64,000 bases of DNA from positions 163,122,001 through 163,186,000 of the forward strand of contig OZ038378.1 of assembly GCA_964036045.1 (NCBI GenBank), read 5' to 3'. Positions 9,357 through 62,200 of the stretch are shown here, one piece after another (the stretch's first letter is position 1; the number at the start of each line of letters is the position of its first letter). The notes beneath the pieces are model-generated. The model made no database searches and was not told the origin of the DNA. It saw only the letters and a list, made by a program, of their open reading frames with translations. This DNA comes from Eutreptiella sp. 'Long Island Sound 2002'. Taxonomy: Eukaryota > Protista > Euglenida. Both the position numbers and the translations under genes were made by a program.

Positions 9357-9384
9357 CGAAAAAAAATAGACACCCAGAAAAAGT
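9357..9384 (-). other. Euglenid spliced-leader exon copy at the LINE 5' end
   Basis: Reverse complement reads ACTTTTTCTGGGTGTCTATTTTTTTTCG, versus the recalled Euglena SL ACTTTCTGAGTGTCTATTTTTTTTCG (1 substitution, 2 extra T). Confidence 0.85.
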
Positions 9385-50200: not shown

Positions 50201-53200
50201 TGCATAGCCACGCAGACCTGTAGGTCATTGCATTTACATCAATGCCCGGAAGCTTCAGTAAATAGTTGACGACTGCTCGATGTCCACCTCGACAGGCATC
50301 ATGAAGAGGTGTGCAGCCCATCGCTGTAGGAGGGAGGCAGGAGGGAAACCATTTTGGACAGCATGCGCCAGAGGGTTGTGCTGCATTGTCAATATGTGCT
50401 GCAAATCGGAGGAACACCACAATTTAGTACTATTGCATCAGGCTTTTAAAAATCAGCGTCACTCAGACGTTTGGAGTAAGTGCTACAGTGGGTGCTGATT
50501 TCCTCTAGGCGGAATCTCAGTCTGCGGCCCTCAAGCAGGGTTCCTGTTCAGGGGTCTCAGCAGGAAGGGCACATTGCGCATGGCTGCTTCTGTCATACGG
50601 CTTTGCTTCTGTCATACGGCTGGTTCTCTTACTTGGTGCACGTCCCATTGCCCTACACCCCACATAACACACAGGTTAGGTTGGACAATGTTGGGGAGTT
50701 ACATCTGGCAACAGAATTCACCGTCAAGCGCCATACTTCAAATCAACAAGCGAAGTCAACTGACCATCAACTGCCATTGGTAAAATAGAAACCTGCAATG
50801 GGCAACCCGCTATGTGTACATTGAATTGACCATGTCTGCTGATGCCTCACTGTCGCTAGTCCTTGACCAATCGCTGTGCATCAATTGCCTTTTTATCATG
50901 CATAGCCGGTTGCTGCATTTCTGCTGTAGGGGTCTTGGTAGATCTGGGCGCTGCAACAGGTATGGAACAGTCTCTGTCCATTTTGTCCAGAAATATTGGC
51001 TATGTTCTCTGCAGTTGTGGTCAGTGTGGGGAACACTAAGGCAGGGATGCTTTTGCGAAAAAAGTGGAATGAACACTGCATTGACGAACAAGAATACGTC
51101 TTCCACAGCAATTGTGAATAGCTTGCTGTGCCAGCACAGCAGCAAAGACAAACTGTTTACAAGGAAAGGTGAGAAGGGCACACCATCCTGAGCATTGATG
51201 TCAATATGGTGCTTACGGAAAGTGCATAGCACTTCGACCATATCCAAATCACCACGTTCCGCCGCCAGATGCAAGCATGTCATGAGTCCACCTGCACACC
51301 AATGAAACAACAAATAAAGACTGTCATCAAGACTAATCAGCAACATTCTTCCACCCCCCTGAACTCTGTCACGTGCTGTGGTCGCTGTTGGTGCCTCACC
51401 AATACTGGTTGTGGCATGAAAGCAAGTGCAAACTAGAAACCTCAAGACCTCACATCGTCCCATCACAAGGCAATTTGCATGTACAGCGTAAGAGAACGCA
51501 ATTGTGGGCTCCACATATAACTGATCTTTCTTCACACTCACATGAGGGGGTGGCCTGCAAACGGTTTTTGTTGGGGTGTGGTTGTTGGATGCCCTTGTTG
51601 CAGGTGACAATTTGTCCAGACAATAAACTTCTTGATTTGTTGATATTGATATGCCTTTTTCTGTTTTTCCATTGTTCACTTGTGTTTCTAAGCGGCCATT
51701 CTGACAAGCCCGCAAAAAGGTTGGGAGGAGACAATTTCATGAGTTAGACGAATCTTTCGTTGCTCACCTCTTATCTGTGCACTATTTTCCACGTGTCCTT
51801 TATGGCTTTGTTTGACAGTCATTTGTCAAATATCCTCCTGCTGTGATTGTCCCAAGAAAATTCTGTGGTTGCCCTGTGTCATGTATCCTTGAAAAGAGGG
51901 ACAGGAAGAAACCGGGGAGGAGGATGAGGGGATGTCACTTTTGAACACTAGGCCCGGAAATTGTGCTGTCTGCAGGTCCCAACTCTGTCTCCCATATTCT
52001 CGAACTGACCGGTTAGGGCTCGGATTAAGCATGCACCCCTGATAGCAATCCGGCAGTGCTTGTGGCTCTGGACCGTGGTCAGACAGCATACAGGGCAACG
52101 GGGGGGGGGGGGGCGTAGCAATGGGCCATATGCCAACTCCTTTCCACTTTCGGACCACTTTCAGGGGGGGGGGGGGGGGTTGGCAAGAAGCCATGGTCTT
52201 GTGTTCTCGTCTGCAGCTGGCGGCGCCCACTGGCCGATCGCCATTCGCTGCCCTTCCCTTCCCTTCCCTTTCCTTCAGTGAAGGTCCACCAAAGGGGGGG
52301 GGGGGGGGGCTCCCGGACCCCAACATATCTGGCTTAAAATGACCGCCTCATGGCGATAATCACTTTGAGGTATGTATGTTGGGGCAAAAAAATTGAAACA
52401 GGGGGGGGGGGGCATGGTAGGTGGTACTTTTGTTAAAGGGGACAAAATCACAAGTGGGTACATCACCCCTGCCTTCTTAGGGCCCCATAAATGGGTGGAA
52501 TTGCTACAAAACCCCTGCGTTCTCGGGGTCCCCAATAGAGGGGGACAAAATCAGAAGCAGCTGCATAGCCCCTGCCTTGGAAAAGAAGATTCATGATGAT
52601 GCATGGAAAAAAGAAGGACAAAATCAGAAATAGCTACATAACCCTTGCCTTGGAAAAGTAGATTCATGATGAGGCATAGAAAAAAAGGCAAACCAAAGGT
52701 ACAACCCCATACCACCACTGTCCCCTAAAGGATCACTTCTGCCAGCAGAAGGAATTGAACAAGGGTCTCTCCAACTGCAGGTGCCGTGTTCCACCAACTA
52801 GGGCAAAGGCCGATTTAAGTCCCGGACGCCATGCGAGTTCCACCAACTAGGGTATTAGCCATCTCTGGAAAATGGTGCTCACAGATGGGATAATGATTTT
52901 GCGCTCACTGAAAAGAGCAAGTTTTTGTCCACTTTTGAATTCTTCTAAAAATTCCGAGGATATTGAGTATAGACACATTGGGTGAAAACGCATTTTTTTT
53001 ACCCTTTGCCACATCAAGCAAAAATTGCTTACAGTGTCTTTGGCGCCGATGGTCCGGCACTTTCCTCCCAATTTCCAGGGACGGGGGGGGGGGGGGGTCG
53101 GCGTCAAGGACCCGGGCCCGGTGTGCCCCCCGTGATACAGGGCCCCTCTGCCGCGGTGGACCCCATGCTTGTTTGACTTGGCATACCACGCAATTATGAT

Positions 53201-56200
53201 CCTTCTGCCTCCACCAAAAATTGTGAGAGGTGGGGAGCCCGCTCATGATGACAATGTCCCCATTTTGGAACTGCCCCACCTGCCTGACTTTGGGGGCTCG
53301 AATCTGGGATTTTGCCTCCCCGTGGGCACATATGTTGTGGGCACATATCTTGGTTTTCGACTGGGACGAATATTCATCGCTATGGTTACTGGGGAGGGTC
53401 GCGAAGCCTCAAGCAACGCTGTAGCCGCCCGGGTGCCACGGCTCGCTCCGGTATCCCAAAGACTGGGGGGGGGGGGGGTCTGAGTGTTTCTGGTGTGGGT
53501 GGGTCCGTTAACCACTCCTCCATCATCACGGCTACTTTCCTGAGCTACTTTCCTGAGGGCCAAGACGAGGTGCTGCAAAATTGTCCGGGGGGGAAGCATA
53601 CACAGTTGGCATTAGAATTTGCAAATCCTAGAGTTGTAGAGGGAACCCATGGCGTTCAAAATTCAACAGTACATTGAAAAAAATAGGCATTCCAGGGTGA
53701 TTTTTAGCGCCTTCTTGGGCCGCGCAAAAGGGGCACAAACCCCCCCCCCCCCCCCAGGCCAAACGAATGCCAAAAAATGTTAAAAATAAGTTGCATGCTT
53801 TCATGTGGTTTGAATGTGCATGCATCTTATGTGTCCAAAATAGTTGAAGCAAATGGCTGTATTTCCCGCCATTTTTGGCAGTTGGAATCCAGCCTCTCAA
53901 TTTGCCACACCCGTGCCACTGCTGAGTTCTGCCCAAACTTGAGAGGATTCATCTTCGTATATCAAGCATCGTAGCATCCACCAAATTTTGGACCTGATTT
54001 ATTTGTCCATCCTGTGCATGCTTGCTGCTTGCCAAAGGGGTCCACCCTACGCAAAAAAGGGACAAAAAACCTCACCAGTGTAAACAGCGGCTTGGTAACC
54101 CCTGCCGTATTAGGGTCCTGCAGAGCTGATTACCCTGCTAGATGCTGCCAGATGCAAAACACCTCTGCAGGAGGCCACTAGATGTGCTTGCATGTGCCTG
54201 CAGAGGCTGGAAGATGGGGCCAAAATTTCTTCCAGGTGTCAACTCTAGTTGCACACTTGTTCGAAAGCCAGGTGCAGACTTGTTCTAAAGCATGCACAGG
54301 CCAGGGTAATGGGGTTGGGGAGAATTGTATGCCATGCCCTGCAGACTCCGCTGTCAGCATTGGCAAAAATGTTCCATTTGTCAGAGCGTTTCACATTTTC
54401 ATGCAGCTCCAACCCCCGCAGACTTTGCTGATACTTACTTTATGCACTGGAATCACAAACGCATCTCACAAGAAGAGGCATACGAGTCCGAGTGTTCACA
54501 TCCGTATTGGGGTGCTGCAAGAGCATCTTGGTGATAAGTGTGTGTGCAGCTCCTGCCGCTGCATGCAACGCCTCTCGGCCATCGTCTGCACAGGATAGAC
54601 ATGGGTTGCTGATGGGGCCAGGGGTGCAGTGCCACGGTGTTGATGCTTTGTCAATGCTTTTATGGGGGGGAACCATTGAAGGCGTGAACAACAGCCTCAC
54701 ACACACACAGACCCTATGCTTTGCATTGAGGTCGTCCTGTAGCACAACGAAGTCGTGAACGAACCCGTGAAATGGGAAACAACAGCAAGTGACCAGAAAC
54801 TGCAATTCAAGACTTTGTACCGAAATGGTGCTGTGCTAACCAGAGGTTCACCTTGATTTTTCAATGGGTGGTGACACAAATCTACTCTGCTTACCGAACT
54901 TGCTGCCATGAAATTTCATTCCGTTCAATACAATCCGACAAAGAAATAGCCAAAGACAGCTGGAGCAAATTGCTGAGTGATGCATAAAGAAATTGACTGA
55001 TGCAATGGGAGACCCCAGCCTCAAAAAGGGAGGAGGATCCCTCCTCCCTCCCAGATTTTGAGGGCTGTTCTCACCCTTTTGGCGGGGTTTATCCATCTGG
55101 AATACTTTTTCTTTCGCACCCTCATCCAATTCACACATGTAGGACGTGACAAACAGGCACAGATCCAATTCACACACACACACAATGAGAACCGCAAAAA
55201 CAAGAACAGAGCAAGAAAAGCAGTGAAAGAAAACTCCTCAGGGACAGCAGAGCTGCCCTAGACGTCTTTCGGTCTGTCAGGAAACGCGGCAATGTGCTGC
55301 ACTGCATAGAGTCATTTCAGGTCCTGCTCCCTCACCTGCCCTGACAATCGTGCAGCGTTCATGACAGACCATAATATTCACCTACGGAGGAGGTCGTGTT
55401 GTCCCGTCAAAACAAATGCAACCTGTGCTAGGTGCTTCCACCTGACCGCACACACACAGAGGGTAGGGCAAAGGGGAGGGCGAATTGAAAAGTGGCACTG
55501 CGTGCCTGAAGCAGGTGTATGTCAGTGCACCAGGTTGGGGTGTATCCCTCCGGTTGTAATTCGGTTGGTATCACCTGGTCGGTGTAGTTGCTGCCATCCC
55601 ACACTGCATTGCGAAAAAGCCAGTGCAGCAGTTTGTCAACTGTGGTTGCCTGGGGGCAGGGCTTGTGGTGGCCTATTGCGCACACCGCGCGCATAGTGTT
55701 CTCCGCCATCCATGGGGATGCCGAGTACACACGGCGCACTGTCTTGTGCATCGCGCGCATCACAGCCATGCGCACACACACACACACACAGATGTGAAGA
55801 AGAAGTCCTGGATCCCACACGCAAAGCGAAATTGAAAGCGGCACGTGGGATCTGAGTGGCTTTTGCTACTCTCGGCAATACCCAATATTCAAATCAAATA
55901 CATTGCGGCGTAGGCACCTTTCGAAAAAAATAGACACTCAGAAAAGACACACACACGTGCGTGCGTGCGTGCACAAGCGCACAAACAGAGGAACTACACA
56001 ACCGTGAAGCCCCTGATCCCACATGCAGGCGGCAAGGAAGAGGAGCACATGGTATGTTAAATCTGAGTCACGCACATGACAGGCAAACAGGCATTGTGTC
56101 AAAGCAGTCCGAGAGTACTGGTTTTGTCAGGCGCGTCCCAATAAGAACACGAGCGGTTCATGACACTCACTAAGTGCCTTACCAACTCTAGTATGTAATC

Positions 56201-59200: not shown

Positions 59201-62200
59201 TTATGGCTGCTCGTCTTATAAACTTAGACAGAGTTGCCCTTGGAGTGTTCAGAAACAGTGTGGAACATGCTTTCTGTGCCACATTATGCGCCTCTTGCCT
59301 TTTCTTCCCAGTCCATCTATCTTGGAAGCGAAAATAGAGGGTCGTGTTTATAACGTCATATACTATACCGGGGTGCTAAAGAATGTACTTATGGGACACT
59401 GGGGCATGGTGTCTACAACAGGGGGAAGAAATGATACGAGTGGAGCGACCAAAGAACCCTACCATAGGTGTGCCGAAGGCGCTGGAGGAAAAAATTGGCC
59501 CAAACGAGAAAAGGTTCCCAGAACCCTGATTATCAGGTGAATTAGGGGGTCAAGGGGAGGGAGGCAGGGGTCCAGGGGGGAGGGGTCCCCCCCCTGCCGG
59601 AATGAAAAATAAAGCAACACCCTGGGGGGGGGTCAGGTCTCATCACTGGGTGTTGCCCTCACTGGTGGAGGTGGTATAATGGGGGGGGGGGGGTCTGTCG
59701 ACAGGCGGGCAAGCGGCTGCCCATGCCAGCCATGCCCCTCGTGGCCCGCCCTGCAACAGCGGCTGATGCCCTAACCCAGCTACCGGCAGCGGCTGCAGGA
59801 GGTACTGTGCTCTAAGCACCCCCACCATCCCTTGCCCTGTCTGGCCTCAGCCTCCCCACTAATGAGCCCCCAATGCATCATCTCGTGTCCGGGCTTCCGG
59901 TGACGCTCTCCCTTTCTCGACTGCATGTGAAGCCTGACCCACAGCACTGTGCTTTTCCTGAACCTCTCCGATGGACATAAACGACCTCCATCAACTAAGC
60001 AGGCCCCACAAAAGATAACCGGAGCACTAGACTGTACCTGACCGCGGGTGCCACTGTGCTGGTGGTTTTTTGTCATCTCAACCCAGGTCAGGAAGCTTGG
60101 AAAGCCTAATGCACCAACAACAGCCGCATGTGTTGCCTTGACCCGGTATCGTAACCTTAATCTTAATGATAATCATCACCGCTGGGCCGGAGCAGGGTAT
60201 GGCTTGAAGGGCACTCTTGGCCCCAGATACCAAGGCACATCACTGAAACCAATGATTCCAATGTTCGGTGCAGATGAATCACAAAGTTTGGCGTTTCATG
60301 TGGTATAAATTGAGTGAGTGATTACAATTAATCGACTGGAATTGTAATCATTAAGTTGAAACCTTTTTACAGCACAAAAAAAATAATCTGCGGTATGATT
60401 TTTTTTCATGTGCGACATACATCTCTGAACAGGGTCTGAACGTGGAGAGAAGCGTCAATTATTTACAGGGCCTAAAAAATTTACCAACTCAGGGCACAAA
60501 ATCGGATCAAATCGGAGAAAAGGGGCCCCAATTTGGGGGGTTGCATTTAGCCTTCATGCCCCCCTACATTGTTGTTCCTGCCCTTCCAGGTTTCCCCCCT
60601 GGAAAGGGGGTTCCTGCCAGGGGGCAAAATTTCGCTGTTTCAGATCCAGGCAGGGTGTTTGTGCACAGGAGTGGGGGTCATTTCATGCCGTAAAAATGGG
60701 GAGTGTATCATATTCCTTTGTATGCCAGTACCACACTTGTACACCTGTTGTCGCGTGACAATGCGGAATTTTGTCTTCGACACCCAGAAACTGAACCTGG
60801 TTGTGCAGATGACTGTTGGACGAATATCCCTGCCCAGTCAGGGGATATGTCTTAAGAGGACAGAAATCCCCCCCCCATTTGGGAGCAGGCCTCATGAATC
60901 TCGTGAGTACGGGGACGCCAGTGGCTGGAGGAGGTCAGGATCAAGCAGCATGCGTTGACAGCGGCCGACAAGACCCCTGTCCTATCAGCCTCTCACTGTG
61001 AGCCCATGTCCAGACAACCTTCCGATGATTGTGACTGTGGAGGACCTGGTATGGAATGCCCAGCTGAGTCCAACAGAAGGTGGCCGAAACCTGCTTTGTG
61101 GGTCCCCGGGCGTGCAACAAGGGGATGCATGTGCATAGTGACAGACAGGCACATGGTCGCACATACGAGACACGGCGTTCACGGAAATCTTGGAATACTG
61201 CAGCAACTTGCACAGGATCCTGTAGTAGCCGTGCTCCGCTGCAACGTGCAACGCAGTTCGCCCATCCTCTGCAGAAAGAACGGACTGCGTCAGGCGTGAT
61301 TTGCTCTGGATCCAGCATCTCATCAGACCAGGAATAGAGCCCACATCTGTCTTGTGTACACCTTCTTTAAATCGAGGAATCAACCTGCGGCCCTAGCTTA
61401 CATCCGACCCCATGGGGCTGGAAGACGCGTCTGGTTCACCACACAAAACCCAGTTGGCTGTGGCGGATGCTGCCTACTGTCAGCTGAAACATCGTTTTCC
61501 AAACTTGGTCGAGCAAGGAAATTCGCTGTGCACTGAGGGCCGCAATTTTGATGTTCAGACCAAAATGGCCTCATGAAGCATGCAAACTGAATCAGTCTTC
61601 GACGTACCAATGTATGATACATTAATTGATAATGCAAAACACCATAATGGCCATGAACAGTGGGGCGTTTCCCATCCATAAAAATGGGACGATAGTAAAC
61701 ATTTGCGGCTCAAAACTGAGAAATTCAAAATTTTAGTGATTTGAGGATTTTTCAGCCGACCCCCATCTGGCCCTCATGAGCAGTGGGCCCAACATTCCAC
61801 CCAGACCCACCTGACTGCAGCCATCCTTGGGTGAAATAATAAACCCCACAAGCAGGTCTCAGAAAAAACATGACATTGTTTTGCAGTGAACAACCAGCCT
61901 CTGTGGACCCTGCCCCTGTCCCGGACCCCCAAACTGGCCCAAACAGTGCACCATGTGTGCTTAATTCCGCTCTGCTGCAAAGCAACTGCGAGCTGCAACT
62001 GCTGGCCAACAAAATTACGAATAACTCAGCGAGCGCTCCATAAGCTTCTTCGAGGAAATGAAGAGAAAATCGCCCAAGACAAATTGTCTGCTTGCACTGC
62101 TGTGCAGCACCTGGATCCGTGACCCGGCTCTTAGAGTTCAGTGGCACCACAATAACCCCGGACTTGAGGTACAGTATTCTTTAGTCAAGTTTGGCGGCAG

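What the first reader, a model, noticed from the sequence alone, without database searches (positions are those of the whole stretch)
55773..55956. Candidate 'SL-SINE': 156-nt spliced-leader-headed element with a 3' hairpin inside a (TG)n target
Seen: the minus-strand element begins CTTTTCTGAGTGTCTATTTTTTTCG (SL, AG intact), followed by AAAGG rather than a GT donor, and has no ORF beyond ATG TAT TTG ATT TGA. Near its 3' end is a hairpin GATCCCACGTGC-18 nt-GCGTGTGGGATC (8 perfect pairs, then 2 G-U and 2 G-C; 55811-55852). It is bounded on both sides by (TG)n, a possible 10-nt TSD. Inference: a short non-coding trans-spliced RNA retroposed by a LINE into microsatellites. This would be a SINE class whose head comes from SL trans-splicing rather than a Pol III promoter. 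It is a second, independent sign of SL-dependent retroposition in 64 kb. It lies sense-oriented in an intron, where its CTTTTCTGAG could act as a cryptic acceptor.
Basis: partly seen in the sequence, partly recalled or inferred. Interest (0 to 1): 0.75.

Follow-up and report, generated by a model that had tools for sequence, protein, structure and literature searches.

The report
Spliced-leader-tagged copy of Euglena retroposon
This 156-base stretch is a dead copy of an abundant short Euglena jumping element, made from an RNA that already carried the cell's spliced-leader tag. The family matters because its conserved core looks like a rearranged self-cutting (hammerhead) RNA that sits exactly where the tag is joined.

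Summary

The reading is partly right.
- **Multi-copy family.** About 38 relatives of this subtype exist. At least 2,246 genomic sites carry the same two conserved boxes.
- **The SL comes from trans-splicing.** Unspliced relatives have a pyrimidine tract plus CAG exactly where the SL is joined.
- **The SL is not the family's head.** Source copies carry a 70-280-nt 5' region. Only about 215 sites are SL-headed, so these are processed side products.
The conserved core has hammerhead boxes in type II order. Helix I covaries strongly. Helix II is left open at the SL junction, and an 8-nt arm in this subtype is complementary to the SL.
- **This copy is decayed.** Two core positions are mutated.
- **Likely mobiliser.** The same module lies just 3' of the ORFs of three endonuclease-first Penelope-like element families, which points to these rather than a LINE as the source of the mobilising enzyme.

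Self-cleavage is untested. Other agents of this scan noted the same family on other DNA of this genome. I found no published description in the library searched.

The parts
55947..55956 (-). 5' flanking (TG)5, preceded by (ACGC)n; it is also the tail of the older element fragment upstream
55922..55946 (-). Spliced-leader exon copy (25 nt). Its last G would be G12 of the hammerhead-like core and the C before it would be C11.1
55911..55921 (-). 5' box AAAGGTGCCTA (family form AAAGGCGCCTA). In hammerhead numbering: A13, A14, A15.1, a 6-nt loop that is palindromic in the family but not here, U16.1, H17
55879..55910 (-). Helix I hairpin region. The first 4 and last 4 nt pair in the family; 3 of 4 pairs are kept in this copy
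55871..55878 (-). Decayed core box TTGCCGAG (family form CTGACGAG); C3 and A6 are mutated
55851..55858 (-). Anti-SL arm CACTCAGA, complementary to SL TCTGAGTG; nearly invariant in this subtype
55811..55852 (-). Subtype-specific 3' hairpin (12 pairs, 18-nt loop)
55791..55810 (-). 3' terminal segment ending in CTTCACATC. A YCAC motif just before (TG)n recurs in other subtypes
55773..55790 (-). 3' (TG)9 tail or target microsatellite
55972..56041 (-). 3' end of an older copy of the same subtype (83% identical to L089). The SL-headed copy sits in its tail, head to tail

Best explanation
The element is a dead, diverged, SL-tagged retrocopy of one subtype (here called 'type C') of a large family of short non-coding retroelements in a Euglena-type genome.

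Shown:
- Family members end in (TG)n and sit in (TG)n.
- Source copies carry a 70-280-nt 5' region that ends in a pyrimidine tract plus CAG.
- In about one copy in ten that 5' region is replaced exactly at the CAG by the SL. A trans-spliced RNA was therefore reverse-transcribed to its 5' end.
- Many other copies are 5'-truncated at variable points, as expected for target-primed reverse transcription.
- The family core has the hammerhead boxes in type II order: GAAA, a one-pair helix III with a palindromic loop, UA, a covarying helix I, then CUGAYGA. Helix II is left open at the SL junction.
- Type C and type D copies carry an 8-13-nt arm complementary to the SL.

Inferred:
- Mobilisation in trans by endonuclease-first Penelope-like elements, whose 3' regions carry the same module. 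That element group is reported to prefer (CA)n targets.
- The (UG)n RNA tail anneals to the nicked microsatellite to prime cDNA synthesis.
- SL-headed copies such as this one lack the 5' region and are dead on arrival.

This copy has also lost two core positions.
For: - Family and subtype.
- Acceptor at the junction in unspliced copies.
- Full-length type A is about 450 nt, with variable 5' truncation next to (TG)n.
- Counts: 2,246 exact two-box modules; 215 SL junctions; 112 with the 7-T form. All reversed-pattern controls gave 0.
- True SL RNA genes have a different intron.
- Helix I: 93.1% of cells paired against 48.6% in shuffles, 0 of 500 shuffles as high, slid controls 31-43%.
- Anti-SL arm: 9 of 40 distinct elements have an exact complement of at least 7 nt, where chance gives about 0.7% per element. 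Folds of SL-headed type D RNAs close with the SL:arm helix, z = -2.7 and -4.6.
- Penelope-like elements:
  - 246-bp direct repeats 5,385 bp apart flank a 1,227-aa ORF.
  - The module lies 90-110 nt after the stop codon in three families.
  - GIY-YIG, CxC and DKG motifs occur in that order.
  - The C-terminal model's best matches are telomerase reverse transcriptases, E = 6e-7.
  - There are 8,581 genomic candidates.
- Published microsatellite bias and non-autonomous derivatives of such elements: PMC8557442.
Against: - No autonomous element with a (TG)n tail or with a 3' end like type C was found. The three Penelope-like families examined end in G-runs.
- Similarity between them and the short elements is limited to the roughly 30-60-nt module.
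- Rfam finds no hammerhead in any copy.
- Helix II is weak or absent in most subtypes.
- 5' ends at the predicted cleavage site are not enriched: 3 against 1 at a control position.
- No RNA data were available, so transcription, trans-splicing in vivo and cleavage are all inferred from DNA.
Confidence: 0.8

Rival explanations
1. One reading: an independent SINE class whose functional head is the SL, mobilised by a LINE that targets microsatellites.
For: The element is short, non-coding, multi-copy and sits in a microsatellite. SL-headed LINE-like elements exist in the same window and genome. No Pol III-type head was found: no tRNA and no Rfam family.
Against: Most copies are not SL-headed and carry a conserved 5' region with the acceptor. 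No LINE shares the ends. The conserved module is found in Penelope-like elements.
Confidence: 0.1
2. A chimeric retrocopy: the reverse transcriptase switched template from the element RNA to SL RNA or to another SL-capped mRNA, with no trans-splicing of the element itself.
For: Template switching at RNA 5' ends is known for non-LTR reverse transcriptases (general knowledge).
Against: The junction is exactly at the AG acceptor in about 215 copies of many subtypes. A switch onto SL RNA would copy its intron part, which is absent.
Confidence: 0.03
3. A host small-RNA gene or regulatory element that only resembles a repeat.
For: The boxes and the hairpin are conserved.
Against: There are thousands of dispersed, diverged and 5'-truncated copies in microsatellites. 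This copy has a mutated core. No Rfam family matches.
Confidence: 0.03

Closest known systems
Non-autonomous derivatives of Penelope-like elements: animal non-LTR retrozymes (bioRxiv 10.64898/2026.07.22.740005) and Chlamys-type non-autonomous elements such as MRC1 (PMC8557442)
   Same: Short and non-coding. Head-to-tail clusters. A module is shared with the terminal repeats or 3' region of Penelope-like elements. They insert into microsatellites, (CA)n for Chlamys. A hammerhead-type motif is present.
   Different: The boxes are in type II order with an open helix II, not a canonical type I ribozyme. Rfam does not detect it. The break coincides with an SL trans-splice acceptor. A fraction of the copies start with the SL. 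Euglenids are not among the reported hosts.
SL-tagged retrogenes of dinoflagellates (PMC5585692, PMC12014239)
   Same: The DNA copy begins with the spliced leader because a trans-spliced RNA was reverse-transcribed. SL relics from repeated cycles also exist in this genome.
   Different: Here the tagged RNA comes from a mobile element family, not from a host gene, and the element carries sequence complementary to the SL.
Classical SINEs (tRNA-, 7SL- or 5S-derived)
   Same: Size, non-coding nature, dependence on a partner's reverse transcriptase, and a simple-repeat tail.
   Different: No Pol III-type head was detected. The RNA is a trans-splicing substrate. The likely partner is a Penelope-like element rather than a LINE.
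SL-gene-specific retrotransposons (SLACS, CZAR, NeSL-1); recalled from memory, not tested here
   Same: They associate a retroelement with spliced-leader sequence.
   Different: Those elements insert into SL RNA genes. Here the SL is acquired on the RNA and the targets are (TG)n tracts.

Membership tests
SL-tagged retrocopy | A complete SL exon at the 5' end, joined where the source has an AG acceptor | tested here: met
   In the window the SL ends in ...TCG and is joined to AAAGG. Unspliced relatives have ...CAG before AAAGG.
SL-tagged retrocopy | The body is not the SL RNA gene's own intron | tested here: met
   In the SL RNA genes the exon is followed by GTATATACTCGC..., which is unrelated to the body.
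Classical SINE | An internal Pol III promoter head derived from tRNA, 7SL or 5S | tested here: not met
   ARAGORN found 0 genes. Rfam at E up to 1 gave no relevant hit in SL-headed or full-length copies.
Classical SINE | A 3' end shared with a partner LINE | tested here: inconclusive
   Genome searches with the body and 3' module found only short copies. Candidate lists are capped.
Hammerhead ribozyme | Conserved core: CUGANGA, GAAA and a UH cleavage site | tested here: met
   This holds for the family: invariant GAAAGG..CC, near-invariant UA and CUGAYGAG in 31 diverse copies. It does not hold for this copy, which has TTGCCGAG.
Hammerhead ribozyme | Helix I supported by covariation | tested here: met
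   93.1% of cells paired, 49 double changes, 0 of 500 shuffles as high.
Hammerhead ribozyme | A closed helix II, and recognition by curated models | tested here: not met
   No helix II partner exists in unspliced copies. Only some subtypes can pair with the SL. Rfam gave no hit.
Hammerhead ribozyme | Self-cleavage | not testable with these tools
   This needs in vitro transcription or 5'-OH RNA sequencing. The genomic footprint of cleaved templates was uninformative, 3 against 1.
Non-autonomous Penelope-like element derivative | Sequence shared with the terminal repeat or 3' region of autonomous Penelope-like elements | tested here: met
   The same 12-nt box, helix I and CUGANGAG lie 90-110 nt after the stop codon in three families. 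The similarity is limited to this module.
Non-autonomous Penelope-like element derivative | The partner ORFs really are endonuclease-first Penelope-like elements (GIY-YIG, CxC, DKG, telomerase-like RT, terminal repeats) | tested here: met
   Pfam GIY-YIG is sub-threshold at E = 0.014 in two families. YVGKT..RLRKH, CxC and DKG are invariant. The model's best matches are telomerase RTs, E = 6e-7. Repeats of 246 bp flank the ORF.
Non-autonomous Penelope-like element derivative | A specific partner with matching 3' end and the same (TG)n target | tested here: not met
   The three families examined end in G-runs, not (TG)n. No partner was identified.

The most novel reading that the evidence does not exclude
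The family encodes a split hammerhead. The element supplies helix III, the cleavage site, helix I, the CUGAYGA box and, in some subtypes, an anti-SL arm. Trans-splicing supplies C11.1, G12 and the other strand of helix II. The host's spliced leader would thus act as a ribozyme strand, and self-cleavage 11 nt downstream of the junction would occur only after trans-splicing. This copy would be a fossil of an uncleaved intermediate.
Probability: 0.3. Interest if true: 0.9.

Novelty: new variant of a known kind. Interest (0 to 1): 0.6.

Why it matters
It shows that in a euglenid, trans-spliced RNAs of mobile elements are routinely written back into DNA. In the library I searched, that has been documented mainly for host genes of dinoflagellates.

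It ties a family with more than 2,000 copies to Penelope-like elements, in a lineage where these elements have not been reported.

It puts a concrete and cheap experiment on the table: does adding the 26-nt leader switch on a hammerhead-type cleavage? If so, this would be the first case I know of where a host RNA-processing tag completes a ribozyme.

It also matters for annotation. SL sequences in Euglena genomic DNA are not reliable markers of SL RNA genes, and integrated SLs provide cryptic acceptors.

Tried and rejected
- **Body as SL RNA intron:** rejected.
- **Single-copy processed pseudogene:** rejected.
- **Canonical ribozyme or other known RNA family:** Rfam at E up to 1 found nothing relevant in 16 loci.
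- **tRNA-like head:** none.
- **Hairpin covariation:** not above shuffles.
- **Autonomous partner sought through 3'-tail similarity:** only short copies came back.
- **Footprint of ribozyme-cleaved templates:** 5' ends at the UA site numbered 3, against 1 at a control position, which is uninformative.
- **Naming the large ORFs by sequence:**
  - Pfam gave 0 hits or sub-threshold hits.
  - PDB sequence and profile searches gave nothing.
  - The word-based protein search returned only six same-family proteins, without names or Pfam domains.
  - The exhaustive search gave 801 unnamed relatives.
  - Only the fold comparison identified the reverse transcriptase.
- **Literature:** no paper on SL-headed retroposons or hammerheads in Euglena.
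- **Limit on genome access:** Later copies were fetched by coordinates, so samples are small.

Full report
**What is there.**
On the minus strand, the region 55956-55773 reads as follows:
- (TG)5
- a 25-nt spliced leader (SL)
- AAAGGTGCCTA
- about 90 nt with no ORF beyond four codons
- a hairpin of 12 pairs with an 18-nt loop
- a 20-nt terminal segment
- (TG)9

The SL is of the euglenid type. The genome (2.28 Gb) holds about 3,700 matches to SL+GT, and these are the real SL RNA genes. Their intron is unrelated to the body of this element. The window holds one other SL match, at 9358-9380, which heads a long ORF-bearing element.

**It is one member of a family.**
- The body alone finds about 10 relatives. 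A better-preserved relative used as query finds 38, at 70-86% identity. I call this subtype C.
- The first 70 nt, which cover (TG)n, the SL and the 5' box, match many more places at 84-88% identity. Those places belong to other subtypes: A, B, D, E and more.
- These subtypes are 110-190 nt long from the junction to the tail. All start with AAAGGCGCCTA, have CTGAYGAG some 20-70 nt later, and end in (TG)n.
- Exact two-box modules number 2,246 in the genome. SL-to-box junctions number 215 when the T-run length is allowed to vary. All reversed-pattern controls gave 0.

**Where the SL comes from.**
- Most copies have no SL. In them the box is preceded by a pyrimidine tract and CAG, and the SL of the tagged copies is joined exactly after that AG.
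- The region upstream of the acceptor is conserved within a subtype: about 70 nt in type C and about 280 nt in type A. A full-length type A element is about 450 nt and is bounded by (TG)n on both sides.
- Many copies are cut short at variable 5' positions directly next to (TG)n or a G-run. This is the usual mark of target-primed reverse transcription.
- Three kinds of template are therefore recorded in the DNA: the primary transcript, incomplete cDNAs, and the trans-spliced RNA.
- Among 100 type A copies with an intact box, only about nine independent ones plus one 15-unit tandem array are SL-headed.
- The SL is thus a mark of processed copies, not the family's head. Such copies lack the upstream region and the acceptor.
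- The window copy abuts the 3' end of an older type C copy at 56041-55972. Its 5' (TG)n is therefore that copy's tail.

**The conserved core.**
- Read as RNA, the shared boxes are the hammerhead core in type II order. In sequence they are:
  - G12 A13 A14, where the G is either the AG's G or the SL's last G;
  - A15.1;
  - a 6-nt palindromic loop;
  - U16.1 and A17;
  - a hairpin;
  - C3 to A9 and G10.1.
- In an alignment of 31 diverse copies, the four bases after UA pair with the four before CUGA in 93.1% of cells. They do so through at least eight different sequence combinations. Shuffles give 48.6% and none of 500 reaches the observed value. Slid controls give 31-43%. Helix I is therefore real.
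- Helix II has no partner in unspliced copies.
- In SL-joined RNA the C before G12 restores the canonical C11.1:G10.1 pair.
- Subtypes C and D also carry an exact complement to the SL 6-19 nt after the core. This holds for 9 of 40 distinct elements with at least 7 nt, where chance gives about 0.7% per element. The arm is 8 nt in type C and up to 13 nt in type D.
- Predicted folds of SL-headed type D RNAs close with that helix, z = -2.7 and -4.6. The centroid fold of the window RNA shows it too.
- In type C the arm is the best-conserved block of the 3' half.
- Against a working ribozyme:
  - Rfam detects nothing.
  - Most subtypes lack the arm.
  - 5' ends at the predicted cut are not enriched.
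  - SL-headed DNA copies prove that many tagged RNAs were not cut.
- The window copy itself has TTGCCGAG in place of CTGACGAG and a non-palindromic loop. It could not be active.

**Who moves them.**
- Notes of earlier agents pointed to Penelope-like elements. I checked this independently.
- At C1:158.61 Mb, two 246-bp direct repeats lie 5,385 bp apart and flank a 1,227-aa ORF. Each repeat carries the same box, a short helix I and CUGAAGAG after a CAG.
- Two further ORF families, about 40% identical to the first, have the module 90-110 nt after their stop codon.
- The three proteins share YVGKT..RLRKH, a CxC motif and a DKG motif, in that order. GIY-YIG is sub-threshold in Pfam at E = 0.014.
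- A model of the C-terminal 540 residues (pLDDT 75.8) matches telomerase reverse transcriptases best, E = 6e-7, ahead of group II intron and retron enzymes.
- This is the architecture that Craig et al. 2021 (PMC8557442) describe for N-terminal-endonuclease Penelope-like elements. They also report pseudo-LTRs, non-autonomous derivatives, no canonical hammerhead, and insertion bias to (CA)n and (C)n that hides target duplications.
- A 2026 preprint derives animal retrozymes from the terminal repeats of such elements.
- The link to the short (TG)n elements rests on the shared module only. The three families examined end in G-runs, and I found no ORF-bearing element with a (TG)n tail. The partner remains inferred.

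- 'Cryptic acceptor' is supported for the genome as a whole. At 106 sites a full SL is followed by the SL part that lies after its internal AG. This shows re-splicing of integrated SLs followed by a second round of copying.
- 'Sense in an intron' is plausible. Ankyrin-repeat ORFs on the minus strand lie at 50810-51715 and 60985-61383. No gene model was built.
- No tRNA-like or other Pol III head is present.

**Verdict.**
The same family has been noted by other agents of this scan elsewhere in this genome. I found no publication on it.

Noticed in passing
window 55185-55448 (-), core at 55270-55234: An unspliced copy of a second (TG)n-bounded short family. It has the same design but different boxes: CAG, then ACC, then GAAA, a palindromic loop GACGTC, TA, a 7-bp helix I, and CTGAGGAG. 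L015 and L058 hold relatives, and L069 holds an SL-headed one.
   Followed up: partly
window 9358-9380 (-) and downstream to about 2870: An SL-headed long element with several large minus-strand ORFs. It begins SL+GTTTCTTTTTGTCC and is preceded by C/G runs. L038-L040 belong to the same family.
   Followed up: no
L016-L029 (G000 C24:31.92-31.96 Mb): An SL-headed type A copy lies inside a unit of about 2.68 kb that is tandemly repeated at least 15 times. This is segmental amplification after insertion.
   Followed up: no
L073, L081, L102 (5' junctions): Runs of 10-14 G lie between the upstream flank and the 5' end of unspliced or truncated copies. The Penelope-like repeats also begin and end with G-runs. 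These may be untemplated additions or (C)n targets.
   Followed up: no
genome-wide: Some SL junctions read ...TCG+CGAAAGG, which is 2 nt longer. This fits the acceptor position CAG|C/T-GAAAGG seen in the Penelope-like repeats rather than the position seen in the short elements.
   Followed up: no
window 50810-51715 (-) and 60985-61383 (-): Two ORFs with single ankyrin repeats on the same strand as the element. They may be exons of one gene.
   Followed up: partly
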